DNA of 16,421 nt from Octopus sinensis (Eukaryota), in contig NW_021825207.1 of assembly GCF_006345805.1 (NCBI RefSeq), forward strand, positions 1 to 16,421, written 5' to 3'. How positions within the stretch are numbered: position 1 is the stretch's first letter; each line of letters opens with the position of its first letter. The notes below the pieces were generated by a model, which was given only the letters and a program-made list of their open reading frames with translations, ran no database searches and was not told where the DNA came from. The position numbers and the translations under genes are program-made. Positions 1 through 15,444 of the stretch are shown in pieces.

Positions 1-34
<34 letters not shown>

Positions 35-52
35 TATATATATATATATATA
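1..52. repeat. (TA)n microsatellite
   Basis: Direct TA dinucleotide run with minor interruptions. Confidence 0.97.
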
Positions 53-54
53 CA

Positions 55-218
55 CGAGTGGGTTCTGAAAAGTTCTTCTCTTTAGGGTATCGCGAACGGC
101 CTGGTTGGAGGCCCAACTGCCTGAGTTTCTTTTTACAGGTCTTAGAAAAACTGAAGGATCAGTGCAATAAGTGTGTGAATATGAGAGGGGAATATGTTGA
201 ATAAAATCATAATTAACT
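55..218 (+). mobile_element. Mariner-derived non-autonomous element (one terminus fused to the transposase C-terminal remnant), truncated
   Basis: Starts after TA with a mariner-like terminus CGAGTGGGTTCTGAAAAGTTC. It encodes AWLEAQLPEFLFTGL, then after a frameshift LKDQCNKCVNMRGEYVE* (TAA at 202-204), matching the mariner transposase C-terminal pattern (W..Q..EF...G...L..RW.KCV...G.YVE*). No second terminus is visible. Confidence 0.8.
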
Positions 219-1092: not shown

Positions 1093-1465
1093 GTTTTTCC
1101 AAAGTTAGTTACGTCGTCCTACTCGTGTTGTAACAGCAAGTATTTCCATGCCTTGTCTCACACTTACAGCACACACACGCGCATGCTCACGTAAAACCAC
1201 ACCTGCTCAGTGCGTGTGTTTTATTTGTTCGCCGGGAATCGTCCCAAAGTAGGCGAACCGGCGAAGAAACAAAACTTACGTTGCGAATGCGCTGTCGATA
1301 ATGTTTACAACGCAGCTTCTGATTCGCTATTGGCTTTACTCTCACGCATGCTTTATTGTGGCATTACCAACAAATGGTTTTTACACTATTTGTATGTAGT
1401 CATAGACTGGTGATTTTGTCCGGCGTCTGTTTAATTCAGGCACGTGGTGTTGATTAGACATAAAA
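1093..1465. promoter_or_regulatory. Candidate bidirectional promoter / 5' UTR region
   Basis: CpG-rich, non-repetitive DNA between divergent ATGs (1092 minus, 1466 plus). Contains ATTGG/CCAAT at 1329-1333, E-box CACGTG at 1441-1446, NRF1-like GCGAATGCGC at 1283-1292, and YY1-like AAAATGGCG at 1463-1471 overlapping the ATG. Confidence 0.45.
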
Positions 1466-1626
1466 ATGGCGAAATATCCATCACTCCCGCATCTGGATGG
1501 GATCTGGGACGAGTTATCTCGCTTGTCTATGACTATACGGTGTTTTAACACCCAGTGCAATGAAGGAGTCGTCCTTCAGGCGCTTTACGGCAGTGAACCG
1601 GCAAACAAACCAAACACATTCATTGA
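1466..1626 (+). CDS. Candidate exon 1 of an unknown plus-strand gene (MAKYPSLPHLDGIWDELSRLSMTIRCFNTQCNEGVVLQALYGSEPANKPNTFI-E)
   Basis: aaaaATGG start, complex protein-like sequence, and a donor GA|GTACGT at 1627 (phase 2) compatible with the only open frame of the 3823 exon. Confidence 0.55.
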
Positions 1627-1681
1627 GTACGTGCGGTCGATGTTGTGTACTAGACTAGCGCTGCTTTCAGTTCGTTACTGA

Positions 1682-1752: not shown

Positions 1753-1766
1753 TTTATATATATGCA

Positions 1767-2200
1767 CAGGGGTTGGACTAAATAATGGAAATACCTAGCA
1801 TCATAGCATCATAATTTTGAAATATCTATAAAACCGTTAAAAAGCGTGTTTATTTTTATACTTTCTTTATTTGTTATTAGTGTTGTTTAATATCTTTAGC
1901 TAAAATTGCTGTTTCTTTTCAGATATCATCAGAAAAAGGTAATTAAAATTCATTAAAATGACAGATGTATCGGACATTCAAAGAGGTCAAATTGTTGGTG
2001 CTCGTAGGGCAAGGGCTAGCGTAACGAAAATAGCCAAAATGTTTGGTGCATCAAGAAGTACTGTCTCGAAAGTAATGACAGCCTTTGAGAAAGAGGGAAA
2101 ATCTCCTCGTCGAAATAAAACTCCGGAAGAAACCCAAAACTTTCAGATAGGTACCGTCGGACTCTTACGCGAATTGTTAGAAAGGATCATAAAAGTACCA
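1767..2200 (+). mobile_element. 5' portion of a Tc1-like DNA transposon with a transposase pseudogene (paired-like HTH N-terminus)
   Basis: Tc1-type terminus CAGGGGTTGGACTAAATAATGGAAATACC. From ATG 1958: MTDVSDIQRGQIVGARRARASVTKIAKMFGASRSTVSKVMTAFEKEGK. After a 1-nt loss in the A-run near 2100 and a TAA at 2116-2118 it reads NSGRNPKLSDRYRRTLTRIVRKDHKST, the Tc1 GRP(K)-linker/second HTH pattern. The catalytic domain and right terminus are absent. Confidence 0.9.
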
Positions 2201-2258
2201 GTCTCTTAAAAGATAGAGTACTGGAGTCGATTTGTTCGACGAGGCACTTCAAGGCAGT
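2189..2258 (+). mobile_element. SINE central/3' fragment fused to the Tc1 break point
   Basis: ATAAAAGTACCAGTC (2189-2203) is identical to the reverse complement of 10720-10734 in the SINE there. It is followed by AGTACTGGAGTCGATTTGTTCGAC, which resembles the same SINE family (recalled consensus). Confidence 0.6.
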
Positions 2259-2274
2259 TAGATGTGGCAGGGTA

Positions 2275-2370
2275 TTAGAATGAAGTCTTCAGTCAAGGGA
2301 AGTGCTTTGAAGCAGATTTGAACTCATGATTCGTCAGTTGGTAATTCAACATCTTATCCCTTCCTTACGT
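2275..2370 (-). mobile_element. Degraded tRNA-derived SINE head
   Basis: Minus strand carries a B-box-like GAGTTCAAATC after a decayed A-box region; otherwise heavily diverged. Confidence 0.35.
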
Positions 2371-4314: not shown

Positions 4315-4349
<35 letters not shown>

Positions 4350-4385
4350 CATACATACATATATAGATATGTATATGTATATATC
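4281..4385. repeat. (TA)/(TG)/(TACA) compound microsatellite
   Basis: Direct. Confidence 0.93.
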
Positions 4386-4592
4386 CACACAGATATAAAT
4401 AAACCCGCGTGTGTTTATGTATTTTTATGTACACTACATGCATAAAACATTCGTTCTCTAAAAGTAGGAAGTTGATTAAGATAGGTGACAGGTGGTCAAA
4501 ACCCCTAAATTAGCAATAATTCCTTTCTTATTCACACTCTCACCTACAACCTATACCCACATGCACGCTTCTCACGCTTAGACGTTTGTATT

Positions 4593-4619
4593 CATACATA
4601 TATATATATATTTATATAT

Positions 4620-4663
<44 letters not shown>

Positions 4664-4680
4664 TATATATAATATATTAT
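4593..4680. repeat. (TA)n microsatellite flanking the palindrome
   Basis: Direct. Confidence 0.95.
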
Positions 4681-4972
4681 ATTATATAAAAGGGCTTAGT
4701 AAAATAAATACTTTGCCGCATACTGAACTCATTAGAAATAAGCAGCTAAAAAACTTTTTTAAAGCTATTTCTAATACTTAAAGAAAATCTCTCTCATATA
4801 TAGTGTTTTGCTTAATTCAACTCACAGTTGTGAGTTGAATTAAGCAACACTATATATGAGAGAGATTTTCTTTAAGTATTAGAAATAGCTTTAAAAAAGT
4901 TTTTTAGCTGCTATTTCTAATGAGTTCAGTATGCGGCAAAGTAATTTATTTTACTAAGCCCTTTTATATAAT
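4681..4972. repeat. Long near-perfect inverted repeat (146/144-nt arms, 2-nt spacer GT at 4827-4828)
   Basis: Manual alignment of 4681-4826 to the reverse complement of 4829-4972 shows no substitutions and three homopolymer-length indels. Confidence 0.97.
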
Positions 4973-5070
4973 GTAATAATTTGAATTCGCCTTGAATGGT
5001 CCCTTTGCATACTGAACACTTGGTGAAATTGATTAATAATTAATTAATTTTGCCCTCAATTGTTGAAATT

Positions 5071-5506
5071 ATATATATATATATATATTCGTCCGTACCT
5101 AATCATAGTTATGTATATAAAAGGACACATATTAATGGGAATATGTCTGTGAATGTATGTGTATGTATGTAGAAGTATATACAGAGAGATATAGAGCGTG
5201 ATAGGTTGATGTATATATGGGAATATATAAATATATATGTGTTGTGTGCGATATATATATATATATATATGTATATCTGTGTGTATATATACATAGATAC
5301 ACAGATATATATATATATATATATATATATCTGTGTGTATATATACATAGATAGACAAAGAGACAGATACGAATATATATCTGTGTACGTGTGTGTATGT
5401 ATGTAGAGACATATACAGAGAGATATAGAGCGTGATAAGTTTATATGTGTGTGCGTGCACGCGTGCGTGTACACGCGTGCATGTGTGTGTAAATATATAT
5501 ATATAC
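5071..5506. repeat. Compound TA/TG microsatellite with internal segmental duplications
   Basis: 27-mer ATATACAGAGAGATATAGAGCGTGATA at 5177-5203 and 5411-5437. ATATCTGTGTGTATATATACATAGATA is repeated near 5274 and 5327. Confidence 0.9.
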
Positions 5507-5550
5507 AAACAGATATATTTATTTACTTATATTTATATATTTACACACAC

Positions 5551-5574
5551 ATAGATAGATAGATAGATAGATAT

Positions 5575-5668
<94 letters not shown>

Positions 5669-5688
5669 GGATAGATAGATAGATAGAT
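5551..5688. repeat. (GATA)n microsatellite
   Basis: Direct. Confidence 0.98.
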
Positions 5689-5701
5689 GGTGATACACTA
5701 C

Positions 5702-6609
5702 AAGACATATATTAGATAAATTTAAAAATACCTTATCAAGACCTTCTAAAGATTTACCTAAGAATGCTTATTGCTAGTGATCTAAGTATCGTAAATTTCT
5801 GAAATGTTACTCTTAATCTAACCCAAGACAAATACACACCTTAAAGCAAAATTAATTAAAACTGCCTATATATGTATATACACTTCTACCATCCACGCAT
5901 ACTGGTTAATAAAATCCGCATGTCTCCCGTTTGTTATCGAATAAAGAAGTCTTCTATAAGGTGCTTCCCTCATTCAATATAACTTCAGAAGTCATTGATC
6001 TCAAAGTTAAGATCCCATATATTTCGGATTCCAGTGTTAAATGGACACGTTGCCTTCCTTTCCTTTTAAAGCTTAATCTAATGATATTGTTTAAAACTTC
6101 GAAAGTTGCAGTAAATAATCTTACAGAAATAACCTAAAACTGATTTACAGCCTGAGCTTCAAATATGAAAAACCTTACAACATTTGAACTGACGAAATTA
6201 ACTGAGGCTAAGTGCATCACCCAGAATCTAAAACGCATGTTACCTTCAATCAATCATGCAATGTTGAAGCGATTATATTTAAAGCAAAAGTCACCTCCTG
6301 CAAACTAAACTTTTGTATCATGCGCAAACATAACATATGTATGATCGATGTTAAATTTAAACAACGTTTCTTGAAGCATACTTCTTTCTTCAGATATACG
6401 TATAAAAGAAGAAGAAAAAAACTACAAAGTTATCCAGTTTTAGGTAAAAGATTCTCAAAAGATACATACGATATAGAAATGCAACAGATTGTTGCGTGTT
6501 GCATATGTGAGAAAACCTTCACACTCAAAACGTTTGTTAAATTTACAAACCTCCTAAGAATATATTTGTTAAATGTCGCCATTTCGAAAAGCACATTCTA
6601 AAGCACTAA
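5702..6609 (+). mobile_element. Decayed Penelope-like retroelement (PLE): RT C-terminus/thumb, linker and GIY-YIG endonuclease pseudogene
   Basis: From about 5761: RMLIASDLSIVNF*NVTLNLTQDKYTP*SKIN*NCLYMYIHFYHPRILVNKI...LSNKEVFYKVLP, matching the PLE pattern NFLDVTLNL..Y.PY.KPN...Y....SNHP...NKEVF. Then YRNNLKLIYS/SNMKNL. ORF 6212-6601 gives CNVEAIIFKAKVTS..KHNICMIDVKFKQRFLKHTSFFR..YDIE..C.CEK, a degenerate GIY-YIG. The terminal KCRHFEKHILKH* is at 6571-6609 in a shifted frame. Multiple stops and frameshifts. Confidence 0.82.
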
Positions 6610-7004
6610 ACCTCCAACCTCATTGAATTGACCACTACTTAACTTTTATAACTAGAGACTATATTCGCTTTATATTTATCTTGACTCTTAACCCTAAGGC
6701 TAATAAACATTCCTGATCTCGCTATACTTTATAGCGATACATTCTTTGACATTTTCGGTCTTCATTATTCTAAGCTCATTTGCATATAGCTGAATGTTCC
6801 AATACATAAATATTTACCAGAAACATTTACCCTGCCTCTCTACCCTTGTCCCTTAAGTTCCAACACACCGTAGCCACTCCTGATATCATTATAGACAATG
6901 GTAGATCCTTTGTTATATTACACTTTCAACTCTATTACATCCTATACTTATTTCGGTATATTTTTTTTATTCCTCTCGTTTTCTGCTCTTTTTAACCAAG
7001 TCAA

Positions 7005-7061
7005 TATGTAGATACATACATGTGTATACACACACACATGTACATGTGTGTGTATGTATAT

Positions 7062-7115
<54 letters not shown>

Positions 7116-7185
7116 CATATTCATGTATATGCATGTATATGAGTGTGTATGTGTGTAGGCATGCATGTATGTAAGCATATGTATA

Positions 7186-7248
<63 letters not shown>
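7005..7248. repeat. Compound (TG)/(TA) microsatellite
   Basis: Direct; explains ORFs 6948-7277, 7111-7296 and 7165-7347. Confidence 0.96.
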
Positions 7249-7251
<3 letters not shown>

Positions 7252-7377: not shown

Positions 7378-7628
7378 GTATGTTGGTAACTGGTTGAAGT
7401 TTGATGATTGTTTAGCTTTTGCTAAATGATGAAAACTTGAAACTAGGAGTTATTCCATCAAATAGATTGTATATTTCAATATATTATATTCTCTTCTCTT
7501 GAGCACTCTTAGTTTTGTCACTGAACACACAGACACACGTGTGCGAACATGACGGGAGTGACAATATGGGAAATAATGTATTGTTATACATCCAGGGAGA
7601 ATCAATGACTAAATAAGACACCTCGCCC

Positions 7629-7800
<172 letters not shown>

Positions 7801-7803
<3 letters not shown>

Positions 7804-7950
7804 GACGGGATTCTTTCAGTTTCCGTCTACCAAATCCACTCACAAGGCTTTGGTCGGCCGGAGGCTATAATAGAAGACACTTGCCAAGTTACCATGCTGT
7901 GTGACTGAACCCAAAACCACATGGTTGCAAAACGAACGTCTAGACTACAA
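7801..7950 (-). mobile_element. tRNA-derived SINE (CORE-like octopod family)
   Basis: Minus strand has B-box GGGTTCAGTC, a CORE-like TTGGCAAGTGTCTTCTA segment and the 3' part GCCGACCAAAGCCTTGTGAGTGGATTTGGTAGACGGAAACTGAAAGAA, ending at (TA)n. Matches a recalled abundant octopus SINE. Confidence 0.85.
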
Positions 7951-7976: not shown

Positions 7977-8209
7977 TGTTGCTGTTGTTGTTGAGCGAAC
8001 GGTCTTCGTCCCTGTAGTGGGAGAAGTCCGAAACGTTGTCCTTTCCTATTCGTGAGCCCCGCAGAAGAGAAAGTAGGTCAACCTCCGACACCGAGAGCAT
8101 CGACGGATAGATGAGTGCGCATCTAGGCTGAGCGGTTGGGTAGGAAGTCGGAGACAAGAATCGAAACCGCGAGTCCGTTGCCCTAACCATTAGGCCATTG
8201 CACCTCCAC
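7977..8209 (-). mobile_element. Internally deleted tRNA-derived SINE with (CAA)n tail
   Basis: Head GTGGAGGTGCAATGGCCTAATGGTTAGGGCAACGGACTCGCGGTTTCGATTC aligns to the head of the 13531 copy but lacks TCGGAGGATCGCG and the central body; the 3' part differs. Confidence 0.8.
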
Positions 8210-8730: not shown

Positions 8731-8911
8731 TCTTCGTCTTTCCGCCATTGTTCCCTTGCCACCCCTACTCCTCCTTCTCCCCACCTCCCCCCACCACGTC
8801 GTATTTAATTCAGACATGTTTCTAACTTGTTCTCTTCACTCACCAATACGTCTTAATTAAAAATGACTGCCATTTTTAATTGCCAATCCCACCGTGTCCG
8901 GCGGTCGGACG

Positions 8912-9910
8912 GAGGGTGGTGGTAGTGGTGGTGTGGAGGCCTGGTTTGGGGATGAGGATGGGGGAGGGGGTATCGGTGATGAAGTTTCAGGTAAAATGGT
9001 GGTGATAGATGCTACTGAAATGAAAGCAGTAGCGGCTGCAGTTGAGGTAGTGATGGTGGTGGTGGTGATGATAGTGGTGGTAGTGGATATATTAATGGCA
9101 GAGATTCAGGTGATGGCGTCGGAATCACTGTTATTGATGGTAATGGTAGTGGTGGTGGTGGTGGTGATGGAGGTGGTGGTGATGGTGTTGTTGTTGTTGG
9201 TGGTGGTGATGATGATGGAGGAAATTGTACTGTGATAGTGGTCGTAATGGTGGAGATGATGGTGGTGCTGTTGGTGGTGGTAGTGGTGGTGGTTATGATA
9301 GATAGATGCCGATGACGGTGGTGGGGGATTCTGGGAATGAAAGAGTGGATGGTAATGTTATAGGGGGAAGTTGATAATGGTGGTGCTGATAGTTGTAGTG
9401 GCCGTAGAAGTCTTTGTAGTGATGGTGGTGGTTGTGGTGGTTATATTAATGGTAGTGAGTAAAGTAGTAGTTGTGTGGTAGCGATTGTAATGGTAGTAGT
9501 AGGTGGAAGTCGTTATTATGATAATGATAATGATGATGGTATCGGTGACCGTAAAGGCAGTTGTTGTTATTGTTGTTGTTGTTATGGTGGTGGTGATGGA
9601 TGCGGCGGCAGTACACACCCATTTGAAACACTGTTAAGGTGGAAGTTGTTGATCATGTTGATGGTGATGGTGATGGTGATGGTGTTTCTAGTACTGGATG
9701 TACTTCGTGGGGTGGTGGTGTTTGGTAGTGAAATGTGGTCTTGATGTTATAGATATAGTATCTGCTGTAGTTTGGGATCTGGTGAGAATGTAGGTTGGTG
9801 GTAGCAGTGACGGTGGTGGTGGTAGTGGCGATGGTAGTAGTAGTAGTAGTGGAGATGGAGGTAGTTGTAGTGGTGGTGGTGGTGATGGTGGTAGTAGTTG
9901 TGATGGTGCA
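8912..9910. repeat. ~1-kb cryptic (GGT/GAT/GTA/GTT) trinucleotide tract
   Basis: Strongly G/T-skewed period-3 sequence; the source of the V/M/G- and T/H-rich ORFs. Confidence 0.92.
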
Positions 9911-10081
9911 AAATCAACGTATCCACCTCTTCGTTCTCCGCTCCCCCTCCTCCTTCTCCCCCTAGCTTCCACTATACTGTCACGTGACAACAGGCGACGG
10001 CGCAGTTGCTTGCTGGCCGAAGTTGTATAAATAAATCATCCATTTTGCGAGTTGAGACTTGGCGGTTTCAAAAACAGAGCA

Positions 10082-10150
<69 letters not shown>
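10082..10150. repeat. (AAT)n microsatellite
   Basis: Direct. Confidence 0.97.
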
Positions 10151-10151
<1 letters not shown>

Positions 10152-10321
10152 ACAATAAATAAACAGCAAATAAGACAATAAATAAGGAAAGCACAAACCA
10201 TAAAGACAACAAAAAAAAGACAAAATAAAGAAATGGACAAAACGAAGAAAAAAAATAAAAGAAACATTGTGGACATTGATAATTACGGATTTGGTGTTTA
10301 ATTATGTAACATACTTGATAT

Positions 10322-10419
10322 TCTTGTTGTTGCTGTTGTTGTGGTTGTAGGGGAGGTGACGTGTTTGTCGATAGTAGCTATGTTGATGTTGTTGTTATTG
10401 TTGTTGCTGTTGTTGCTGG

Positions 10420-10476
<57 letters not shown>

Positions 10477-10620
10477 GGATGACGATGATGATGATGATAG
10501 AAGTGTTGAGAATGAAAGAGAAAGTAACATTTGTGACATTTTTATCGATAGAGATGTTCTGTTGTTGTTGTTTTTATTGGGGTTTTTTGCCGTTGTTGTT
10601 GTTGTTGTTGCTCTTGCTCT
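10322..10620. repeat. (GTT)/(GAT)n trinucleotide tracts
   Basis: Direct; near-pure (GAT)n at about 10420-10498. Confidence 0.95.

Positions 10621-10987: not shown

Positions 10988-11050
<63 letters not shown>
10988..11050. repeat. (TATC)n microsatellite
   Basis: Direct. Confidence 0.98.
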
Positions 11051-11357
11051 AAATATATAAAGATCTACTCCAATATATCCTACTTTATTTACGATAAAGA
11101 TTTGGCTGCTGTTACTACCAGGTCGAAAGGTAACGCAAATGTTTCCTCATTGATTCGTAGGTGTTCTTATATGCCATTGTTGTTTACAGAGATGTCTGTT
11201 GCTTAAGCTTTAGTAATGCTACCGCAGTGCTATTGTTGATTTTCACGTTGGATTTGCTGCTGCTATTGTTCTTAGTGAAAGTGTTGGTGGTGGCGGTTTC
11301 CTTACATTATTCTTCATCAAAGATAACGGTTAACAGGGAATTCTTATCCTTACCGTA

Positions 11358-13530: not shown

Positions 13531-13836
13531 GTGGAGGCGCAATGACCAGTGGTTAGGGCAGCGGACCGCGCGGTCGGAGGATCGCGTTTCGATTCCAGAC
13601 CGGCGTTGTGAGTGTTTATTGACCGAAAACACCTGAAGTCAACGAGGCTCCGGCAGGGGGTGGTGGCGATCCCTGCTGTACTCTTCGCCACAACTTTCTC
13701 TCACCTTTCTTCTGTTGGCCTGCTCGCTTAGCCAGCAGGGTGGCGTCATTGAAGGTTAAAACAATGCGAAGTAATTGTGACCAGCGATGTGTAACAACAT
13801 CTGATAGCCTGGTCGGTCACGGTGATCACGGTGATA
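13531..13836 (+). mobile_element. Near full-length tRNA-derived SINE
   Basis: A-box TGACCAGTGG, B-box GTTTCGATTCC, body AACGAGGCTCCGGCAGGGGGTGGTGGCGATCCCTGCTGTACTC, ending in repeated CACGGTGAT units. Head is homologous to the 8209 copy. Confidence 0.88.
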
Positions 13837-14515: not shown

Positions 14516-14994
14516 TACGTTCATCAGCCCCACTACGTAAACACAGCGCTTCACGTCTCAACTCTATCGTTCTTCACATCATCAACTCAGCTTTATTATT
14601 AATTATTCAGTTGAAATTGAGCGTCGAGAGGCAGGCGACCTATTCTTGCTGTCTGATTGATAAAGCTTCGCTGATATCTGCCAGTTGACACCTTGTCAAA
14701 TGGCCTTTATTTTTCACGTCTGCCTCATACGCAACTAAAATATGTTCACCGAAATATCTCATTAACTATTCATTGGCCGATAAACAATTTTCTATGCTTG
14801 TTCACCTATATACACATAAGAGAACTATTTAAAGATAAATTTATAAATATACATACATACATGCTCACAAATTCACACTGATACACACACATACACACAC
14901 GCACACACATACACGTATTTATACACCTACGTATACAGGTACATAGTTGCATATAGACACTAGATACTACGCAGAGGGATACATTTATAGACAG

Positions 14995-15159
14995 ATGCAT
15001 ACATACATATACAGAAACATCCCTATATACACATACATATGCATACATGTATATATATATATAGATATATATATATATATATGTATATATATGTATATAT
15101 TGTATATATATATATAATATGTAGGTATATATATATATATGTATAGATATATATGTATG

Positions 15160-15191
<32 letters not shown>

Positions 15192-15227
15192 CGGAGAGAG
15201 AGAGGAGAGAGATTAGATATAGATATA

Positions 15228-15266
<39 letters not shown>

Positions 15267-15290
15267 GCACGCCCACGCACACACATATGA
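14995..15290. repeat. (TA)-rich compound microsatellite
   Basis: Direct. Confidence 0.95.
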
Positions 15291-15444
15291 AGCATTAAAA
15301 AGTGCATAATATAACACCACAAGGCATTTCGTCCGTTATTCTACCGATTTGAAATTGAATCTTTATGTTACCATTCAGGTGATTTCTCATATCAAAGAAT
15401 ATGGCCGCAATATAATGGCATTACTGAGCTAAAAATACACAACT

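What the first reader, a model, noticed from the sequence alone, without database searches (positions are those of the whole stretch)
4681..4972. ~292-bp near-perfect palindrome with a 2-nt spacer (fold-back structure)
The 146- and 144-nt arms have zero substitutions and differ only by three homopolymer-length indels (AAT/AATT, ATAAGC/ATAGC, GTGTTTTGC/GTGTTGC). Such palindromes are normally unstable, so this is very recent, maintained, or an assembly fold-back artefact; the homopolymer-only differences are compatible with long-read error. If real and transcribed as part of the putative intron, it forms a ~145-bp A/U-rich dsRNA. That would be a strong ADAR or Dicer substrate in a lineage known for extensive A-to-I editing, or a cruciform/fragile site. 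Inverted terminal duplications are also a known PLE insertion outcome.
Basis: partly seen in the sequence, partly recalled or inferred. Interest (0 to 1): 0.72.

Follow-up and report, generated by a model that had tools for sequence, protein, structure and literature searches.

The report
Near-perfect 292-bp AT-rich DNA palindrome
A 292-base stretch that reads almost identically on both strands is really in the sequence and is most likely a young hairpin-shaped mobile-element insertion in repeat-rich animal DNA, though a local inverted duplication or an assembly error cannot be excluded without the raw reads and the rest of the genome.

Summary
Positions 4681-4826 and 4829-4972 are reverse complements with 0 substitutions, three small run-length indels and a 2-nt GT spacer. 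As a single strand the region folds into one long hairpin (RNA -222.9 kcal/mol, z = -38.6). It is the only non-microsatellite palindrome in the window.

New findings:
- The palindrome is sharply bounded, with unrelated flanks on both sides. That is not the shape of a fold-back chimeric read.
- It lies at the edge of a TA-rich tract, flanked by the octamer TTATATAA on both sides. This could be a target-site duplication, but the octamer is self-complementary, so it is ambiguous.
- Each arm carries its own nested hairpin.
- The centre is fairly GC-rich (9 of 20), unlike human PATRR fragile sites.

No reverse transcriptase, GIY-YIG or hammerhead signal supports a Penelope-like element. No second copy was found in any reachable sequence, but the source genome could not be searched.

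Best reading, about 0.45: a very young palindromic MITE or foldback-like insertion. Rivals are a local inverted duplication (about 0.2) and an assembly or consensus artefact (about 0.2).

The dsRNA potential is real, but transcription, intron location and lineage were not tested. Interest is modest.

The parts
4598..4681 (.). TA-rich microsatellite-like tract directly left of the palindrome (insertion context)
   Evidence: Read directly. The palindrome sits at its right edge. The right flank (4973 onward) is unrelated unique sequence.
4682..4689 (.). Octamer TTATATAA, left copy. Either a candidate 8-bp target-site duplication or simply the outermost part of the left arm.
   Evidence: One search finds a direct repeat with 4964-4971. 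The octamer is self-complementary, so TSD and arm extension cannot be told apart. TA, TATA and TATATA also fit.
4690..4826 (+). Left arm core (137 nt, 28% GC), starting AAGGGCTTAG
4731..4775 (+). Nested imperfect hairpin inside the left arm (ATTAGAAATAAGCAGCTAAAAAAC / TTTTTTAAAGCTATTTCTAAT)
   Evidence: self-inverted match of about 84%. One search gives DNA -8.8 kcal/mol, z = -3.2, 0 of 200 shuffles.
4827..4828 (.). 2-nt central spacer GT
4829..4963 (-). Right arm core (135 nt). It is the reverse complement of the left arm except for three run-length indels.
4878..4921 (+). Mirror copy of the nested hairpin in the right arm. Here the stem is a perfect 12 bp because the extra A is absent.
4964..4971 (.). 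Octamer TTATATAA, right copy (candidate TSD or arm extension)

Best explanation
The palindrome is a real feature of the genome. It is a very young, non-coding, hairpin-shaped mobile element (a palindromic MITE or foldback-type non-autonomous DNA transposon, core 4690-4963) that inserted at the edge of a TA-rich tract and duplicated a TA-type target (TA, or the octamer TTATATAA). Its two arms are in effect one long terminal inverted repeat. The three indels between the arms are either consensus errors in a region that is hard to sequence or very recent slippage events. As DNA it can form a hairpin when single-stranded. If a host transcript runs through it, it would give about 145 bp of perfect dsRNA that ADAR and Dicer-type enzymes would act on.

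Shown: the palindrome, its sharp borders, the flanking octamer, the nested hairpins, the lack of coding capacity and the fold energies.

Inferred: mobility, family membership, age, and any RNA consequence.
For: - The palindrome is bounded, and the two flanks are unrelated to each other. This is what an insertion gives and what a fold-back chimeric read does not give.
- Size (274-292 bp), AT-richness (72% AT) and lack of any ORF over 22 aa are typical of MITEs.
- A direct 8-bp repeat TTATATAA, or TA, flanks the core.
- It sits in a TA-rich tract within a region full of DNA-transposon debris, including a Tc1-like 5' end with an HTH ORF at 1766-2206.
- The outer ends are relatively GC-rich (GGGC, GCCGC) and a nested inverted motif repeats in each arm.
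- Nearly perfect palindromic MITEs are a known kind, for example Made1 (PMC1784062).
- A dispersed repeat family is more likely a priori to turn up in a random 16-kb window than a unique de novo rearrangement (inference).
Against: - No second copy was found in the window or in about 95 kb of eukaryotic contigs carrying the related Tc1 family.
- None was found in JGI metagenome contigs, where the only hits were chance 20-24-nt matches, or in IMG/VR. None of these collections holds the source genome, so this is weak evidence.
- The candidate TSD is self-complementary and lies in TA-rich sequence, so it does not discriminate.
- The termini match no superfamily signature that I could test. The arm is not significantly similar to the neighbouring Tc1-like terminus (26 of 500 shuffles reach the score).
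- Three indels with no substitutions is unlikely as natural divergence (P <= 0.03 even if 30% of changes were indels). This points to some technical noise at this locus.
Confidence: 0.45

Rival explanations
1. Local, non-mobile inverted duplication. A roughly 145-bp segment next to the TA tract was copied in reverse orientation beside itself by replication template switching or snap-back repair synthesis. The result is a one-off AT-rich palindrome, similar in kind to the human PATRRs, that has not yet been deleted or made asymmetric.
For: - The palindrome is real by sequence and bounded.
- No other copy was found anywhere searchable.
- The right arm and the right flank both begin with TGT (4829-4831 and 4973-4975). 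That is 3 bp of possible junction microhomology, expected by chance once in 64.
- AT-rich near-perfect palindromes of 190-600 bp with GC-richer ends exist as single loci in humans (PMC1851657).
Against: - It needs two template switches placed precisely.
- Templated inverted insertions of this length are rare compared with transposon insertions (general knowledge).
- The centre is not AT-rich (9 of 20 G/C against 1-3 in PATRRs).
- The nested hairpin and GC-rich termini get no explanation from this model.
Confidence: 0.2
2. Assembly or consensus artefact. The genome holds only one arm (or something else entirely), and the second arm was created by a chimeric read, a gap-filling step or a mis-join near the self-complementary TA tract. 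The three indels would be unpolished long-read errors.
For: - Three indels and no substitutions between the arms look technical rather than evolutionary.
- Fold-back artefacts occur in both ONT and PacBio data (PMC12870357).
- Inverted duplicates degrade nanopore base calling (PMC7229812).
- The neighbouring (TA)n tracts are self-complementary and prone to low coverage (inference).
Against: - Fold-back reads are symmetric to the ends of the read. Here symmetry stops at 4675/4978 and more than 4 kb of unrelated sequence continues on each side.
- There is no room for adapter sequence in a 2-nt spacer.
- A single chimeric read should not survive consensus.
- The longest homopolymers (A6, T6) are identical in the two arms, and that is where length errors are most expected.
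- Poor base calling in inverted duplicates equally explains indels in a real palindrome.
Confidence: 0.2
3. The hairpin is a small-RNA gene in its own right (an miRNA or hpRNA/endo-siRNA precursor), or a maintained dsRNA element inside a transcript, kept perfect by selection or arm-to-arm conversion.
For: - The hairpin is extremely stable.
- Sub-threshold matches to long-hairpin miRNA precursor models exist (best MIR5380, 78 bits).
- Palindromic MITEs have given rise to miRNA families (PMC1784062).
Against: - All Rfam matches are far below gathering (78 against 150 bits), score equally on both strands and hit plant families. They reflect shape only.
- There is no evidence of transcription, no conservation data and no promoter evidence.
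- An arm of 145 bp is much longer than an animal pre-miRNA.
Confidence: 0.05
4. By-product of a Penelope-like element insertion (inverted terminal duplication).
For: Only the general knowledge that PLE copies often carry inverted partial copies at one end. Nothing in this window supports it.
Against: - There is no RT or GIY-YIG domain in any stop-free segment of 60 aa or more across the window. The same holds for any non-low-complexity segment of 30 aa or more between 2322 and 7449.
- There is no hammerhead ribozyme match, even at E <= 0.1 over the whole window or E <= 10 around the palindrome.
Confidence: 0.02

Closest known systems
Made1 / MiHsmar1-type palindromic MITEs (mariner-derived; source of the hsa-mir-548 family)
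   Same: It is short, non-coding and nearly perfectly palindromic over its whole length. A TA-type flanking duplication is possible. It forms a very stable RNA hairpin when transcribed (PMC1784062).
   Different: Made1 is 80 bp (two 37-bp TIRs plus 6 bp), has thousands of copies and has a known autonomous parent. This element is 274-292 bp with nested hairpins. No second copy and no parent element could be shown, and the neighbouring Tc1-like terminus is unrelated.
Human palindromic AT-rich repeats (PATRR11, PATRR17, PATRR22)
   Same: It is a near-perfect AT-rich palindrome of a few hundred bp with relatively GC-richer outer ends. It is a single locus and technically hard to sequence (PMC1851657).
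   Different: PATRRs have 1-3 G/C in the central 20 bp and need central symmetry to extrude. Here the centre has 9 of 20 G/C, a 2-nt spacer and a 2-nt bulge about 20 nt from the tip. Cruciform extrusion from duplex DNA should therefore be less favoured. No instability data exist.
Fold-back (duplicated-inversion) artefacts of long-read sequencing
   Same: Forward and reverse-complement copies of the same sequence are joined head to head with little or nothing between them (PMC12870357).
   Different: Artefact reads are symmetric about the read centre and run to the read ends. This palindrome is 292 bp, internal, and bounded by different unique flanks.
Foldback elements and hairpin-RNA (hpRNA) loci of insects (from general knowledge, not tested here)
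   Same: Both have long inverted repeats with little or no spacer that can yield long dsRNA and endogenous siRNAs.
   Different: Foldback elements have kb-scale arms built of tandem subrepeats, and hpRNA loci are defined by small-RNA output. Neither subrepeats nor expression could be shown here.

Membership tests
MITE (miniature inverted-repeat transposable element) | Small (under about 800 bp) and non-coding | tested here: met
   The core is 274 bp (292 bp with the octamers). The longest ORF inside is 22 aa.
MITE (miniature inverted-repeat transposable element) | Terminal inverted repeats | tested here: met
   The whole element is one inverted repeat with 0 substitutions.
MITE (miniature inverted-repeat transposable element) | Flanking target-site duplication of a length typical of a superfamily | tested here: inconclusive
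   The direct repeat TTATATAA (8 bp), or TA, TATA or TATATA, flanks the core. All are self-complementary and lie in TA-rich sequence.
MITE (miniature inverted-repeat transposable element) | Multiple dispersed copies forming a family | not testable with these tools
   There is one copy in the window. None was found in reachable collections. The source genome is not searchable here.
MITE (miniature inverted-repeat transposable element) | Termini shared with an autonomous transposon | tested here: not met
   Only the neighbouring Tc1-like 5' end could be tested. The similarity is not significant (26 of 500 shuffles).
PATRR-like palindromic AT-rich repeat | Near-perfect palindrome of about 190-600 bp, AT-rich overall, with GC-richer ends | tested here: met
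   292 bp, 28% GC. The outer windows are the GC-richest apart from the centre.
PATRR-like palindromic AT-rich repeat | Highly AT-rich centre (1-3 G/C in the central 20 bp) and central symmetry | tested here: not met
   The central 20 bp hold 9 G/C and there is a 2-nt spacer. The criterion comes from PMC1851657.
PATRR-like palindromic AT-rich repeat | Cruciform extrusion and genomic instability | not testable with these tools
   Needs plasmid extrusion assays or population data.
Long-read fold-back artefact | Symmetry about the junction continues to the ends of the molecule | tested here: not met
   Symmetry ends at 4675/4978, and the flanks are unrelated for more than 4 kb on each side.
Long-read fold-back artefact | Junction not supported by independent reads | not testable with these tools
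   No raw reads were available. Exact-protein look-ups of 5 window ORFs to reach other assemblies found nothing.
Penelope-like element (PLE) | Reverse transcriptase and GIY-YIG endonuclease coding sequence | tested here: not met
   Pfam scans of stop-free segments found only an HTH_23 domain of a Tc1-like remnant.
Penelope-like element (PLE) | Hammerhead ribozyme motif in the terminal repeat | tested here: not met
   No hammerhead match at gathering, at E <= 0.1 over the window, or at E <= 10 for 4500-5150.
miRNA / hairpin-RNA gene | Match to a curated precursor family at its gathering score | tested here: not met
   The best match is MIR5380 at 78.2 bits against 150. It scores equally on both strands and is a plant family.
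miRNA / hairpin-RNA gene | Transcription and processed small RNAs | not testable with these tools
   No expression data.

The most novel reading that the evidence does not exclude
The palindrome is real and transcribed within a host gene of a heavily RNA-editing animal. It belongs to a currently active family of perfectly palindromic MITEs that seed introns with perfect dsRNA of about 145 bp. Each copy would then be a hyper-editing and siRNA hotspot, or an ADAR sink, and a site of hairpin-driven breakage. The family would give a direct handle on how young repeats shape the editome.
Probability: 0.08. Interest if true: 0.55.

Novelty: new member of a known kind. Interest (0 to 1): 0.3.

Why it matters
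If real, it marks a very recent event: either a transposon family that may still be active or a fresh inverted duplication. It would supply a perfect long dsRNA to any transcript that crosses it, and that bears on RNA editing, RNA interference and innate dsRNA sensing. If it is an artefact, it flags a local weakness of the assembly next to TA microsatellites. Either way it is one locus of a known kind. Its value is mainly as a pointer to search the source genome for more copies.

Tried and rejected
1. A third, diverged copy in the right flank (TTTGCATACTGAAC at 5004-5017). Local alignment is not better than shuffles (132 of 500). Rejected.
2. A diverged copy at 5690-5810 on the minus strand. 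The score is 23 against a shuffle maximum of 20, about 62% identity with gaps. This is too weak to use.
3. Derivation from the neighbouring Tc1-like element (terminus CAGGGGTTGGAC... at about 1768). Not significant.
4. Copies in public collections. Two metagenome scans and two viral scans gave nothing or only chance 20-24-nt matches in gut and environmental contigs.
5. Copies in about 95 kb of eukaryotic ENA contigs (ERZ21867824, ERZ22157276) that carry the related Tc1 family. None found.
6. Reaching independent assemblies of the same locus through exact ORF products. Five ORFs were tried and none is on record.
7. Rfam. Only generic long-hairpin and microsatellite miRNA models matched, all below gathering.
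8. PLE signatures. Absent.
9. tRNA-derived SINE origin. No tRNA-like sequence.
10. Organism identification from the Tc1 HTH fragment. The best relatives are 53-57% identical proteins in unnamed ENA assemblies and an amphipod. The claimed cephalopod origin could be neither confirmed nor refuted.
11. A whole-window repeat scan was dominated by microsatellites and added nothing.

Full report
**Observation.** Read directly and aligned with gaps, positions 4681-4826 and 4829-4972 are reverse complements of each other. There are no substitutions and three indels:
- T vs TT near 4709
- AA vs A near 4740
- TTTT vs TT near 4806

Two unpaired bases, G4827 and T4828, lie at the centre (CTCACA-GT-TGTGAG). 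An ungapped scan reports a 67-nt, 100% complementary core (I2). A dust-masked minus-strand self-BLAST reports 4675-4978 at E = 1e-137. As a single strand the region folds into one continuous hairpin. The RNA energy is -222.9 kcal/mol against -52.4 +/- 4.4 for shuffles (z = -38.6). The DNA energy is -153.2 kcal/mol (z = -36.8).

- *Bounded.* Symmetry continues for about 6 TA-rich bases past one mismatch and stops at 4675/4978. The left flank is a TA-rich microsatellite-like tract (4598-4681). The right flank is unrelated unique sequence. It is the only non-low-complexity palindrome in the window.
- *Flanking octamer.* A scan for flanking direct repeats finds the core 4690-4963 (AAGGGCTTAG...CTAAGCCCTT) flanked by TTATATAA on both sides (4682-4689 and 4964-4971). 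This octamer is its own reverse complement. It may be an 8-bp target-site duplication or just the outer end of the arms. TA, TATA or TATATA with the core shifted by one base fit equally well.
- *Nested hairpin.* Each arm contains its own imperfect hairpin (4731-4775, mirrored at 4878-4921). Its DNA energy is -8.8 kcal/mol, z = -3.2. In the right arm, which lacks the extra A, this inner stem is a perfect 12 bp. The extra A of the left arm therefore looks like the derived or erroneous state.
- *Composition.* The arm is 28% GC. The GC-richest stretches are near the outer end (GGGC, GCCGC; 9 of 20 in 4710-4729) and at the very centre (9 of 20 in 4818-4837).
- *Coding.* Nothing in it codes. The longest internal ORF is 22 aa.

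**The three indels.** However, 50% of arm positions lie in runs of 2 or more. The two longest runs (A6 and T6), where length errors or slippage would be most expected, are identical in both arms. The homopolymer signature is therefore weak. The stronger oddity is three indels with no substitutions. Even if 30% of natural changes were indels, the chance is 0.027, and at 10% it is 0.001. The arms are best treated as truly identical (95% upper bound on substitution divergence about 2%), with some technical noise or very recent slippage. Nanopore base calling is known to degrade inside inverted duplicates (PMC7229812), so indel noise is expected even for a real palindrome.

**Surroundings.** The window is repeat-rich eukaryotic DNA with (TA)n, (GT)n, (GATA)n and trinucleotide tracts.
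- It carries a truncated Tc1-like transposon 5' end at 1766-2198 with an HTH ORF (Pfam HTH_23).
- Protein relatives are 53-57% identical, in unnamed ENA assemblies and an amphipod.
- The DNA is 70-77% identical to copies in ERZ21867824 and ERZ22157276.
- Pfam matched no other protein domain. The scans covered all stop-free segments of 60 aa or more in the window. They also covered all non-low-complexity segments of 30 aa or more between 2322 and 7449.
- There are no tRNAs and no Rfam family at gathering.
- I could not verify that the locus is intronic, that it is transcribed, or that the organism is a cephalopod.

**Artefact.** Fold-back artefact reads are forward and reverse copies of one molecule joined at the middle, symmetric about the read centre (PMC12870357). 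An assembly that followed one would stay palindromic to the end of the read. Here symmetry ends after about 150 bp and different unique sequence runs for more than 4 kb on each side. The 2-nt spacer leaves no room for an adapter. A simple fold-back read therefore does not explain the structure. A more complex error remains possible and cannot be excluded without reads. Examples are a gap-filling step, a doubly switched chimera, or a mis-join next to a self-complementary TA tract. I give this about 0.2.

**Mobile element or local duplication.** Several features are what a palindromic MITE or foldback-type insertion looks like. These are the bounded shape, the size, the AT-richness, the TA-type flanking repeat, the GC-richer termini, the nested inverted motif and the transposon-rich setting. 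Nearly perfect palindromic MITEs are known (Made1, PMC1784062). A dispersed family is also more likely a priori to be met in a random window than a one-off rearrangement.

The defining test, other copies, could not be run.
- The window has none.
- Two apparent partial copies proved non-significant or marginal.
- The arm is unrelated to the neighbouring Tc1-like terminus.
- Metagenome and viral scans gave only chance matches.
- About 95 kb of related eukaryotic contigs had none.

The source genome is in none of these collections, so the negatives carry little weight. A local inverted duplication by template switching remains a fair rival (about 0.2). The only hint of junction microhomology is TGT at both 4829 and 4973.

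**Consequences.**
- *dsRNA.* The thermodynamics support a perfect A/U-rich duplex of about 145 bp if the locus is transcribed. Metazoan A-to-I editing mainly targets dsRNA formed by young repeats (PMC9989829).
- *Cruciform or fragile site.* PATRRs have 1-3 G/C in the central 20 bp. A 9-nt spacer plus four mismatches near the centre abolishes their extrusion and instability (PMC1851657). This palindrome has 9 of 20 G/C at the centre, a 2-nt spacer and a 2-nt bulge about 20 nt from the tip. It is a poorer cruciform former, although hairpin formation on single-stranded DNA during replication remains plausible.
- *Small-RNA gene.* The Rfam matches to miRNA precursor models are far below gathering, equal on both strands and to plant families. 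They reflect shape only.
- *Penelope-like element.* There is no RT, no GIY-YIG and no hammerhead.

| Reading | Confidence |
|---|---|
| Very young palindromic MITE-like insertion | about 0.45 |
| Local inverted duplication | about 0.2 |
| Assembly or consensus artefact | about 0.2 |
| Small-RNA gene | about 0.05 |
| PLE by-product | about 0.02 |

It is a new member of a known kind at most, and interest is modest (0.3). A genome-wide search with one arm and inspection of spanning raw reads would settle it quickly.

Noticed in passing
window 4731-4775 and 4878-4921: Each arm of the big palindrome contains its own imperfect hairpin centred on AAAAAAC/TTTTTT. The single strand could therefore form a branched structure instead of one long stem.
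   Followed up: yes
window 1766-2280 (+): Truncated Tc1-like transposon 5' end. The terminus CAGGGGTTGGACTAAATAATGG lies after a TA-rich site. There is an HTH ORF at 1943-2206 and a frame-shifted continuation at 2119-2280. It is 70-77% identical to copies in ENA assemblies ERZ21867824 and ERZ22157276 (loci L001, L002, L012-L014).
   Followed up: partly
window 1-201 (+) and 1454-1678 (+): By eye, these translate into a mariner-like transposase C-terminus (...CNKCVNMRGEYVE) and a Tc1/mariner-like ...LPHLDGIWDELSRL... motif. Pfam gave no hit, so these are unconfirmed transposon remnants.
   Followed up: partly
window 8900-10520: Strongly G-skewed tract (GC skew up to 0.79) built of degenerate GGT/GAT/GTT trinucleotide repeats, followed by (ATG)n and (ATA)n runs. 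It produces long low-complexity ORFs on both strands. It looks like a minisatellite rather than coding sequence.
   Followed up: no
window 5540-5700 and 10988-11079: A long (GATA)n array lies to the right of the palindrome, with its complement (TATC/ATCT)n about 5.3 kb away (86% complementary over 92 nt). This is a distant microsatellite-based inverted pair.
   Followed up: no
window 8166-8209 and 13531-13574: A 45-nt non-microsatellite inverted pair, 84% identical and 5.3 kb apart (E = 3.6e-5 in self-BLAST). It may be a fragment of another interspersed repeat.
   Followed up: no
window 7016-7250 and 7608-7820: Two long (TA)n-rich blocks about 440 bp apart are scored as 170-nt inverted repeats. 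This is a trivial result of (TA)n being self-complementary, but such tracts are themselves cruciform-prone and hard to assemble.
   Followed up: no
window 4323-4395, 5273-5354, 7004-7092, 14988-15292 and others: There are many sub-threshold Rfam matches to mir-297, mir-466, mir-3149 and mir-1277 models. All lie on TG/TA microsatellites and are low-complexity matches, not genes.
   Followed up: yes
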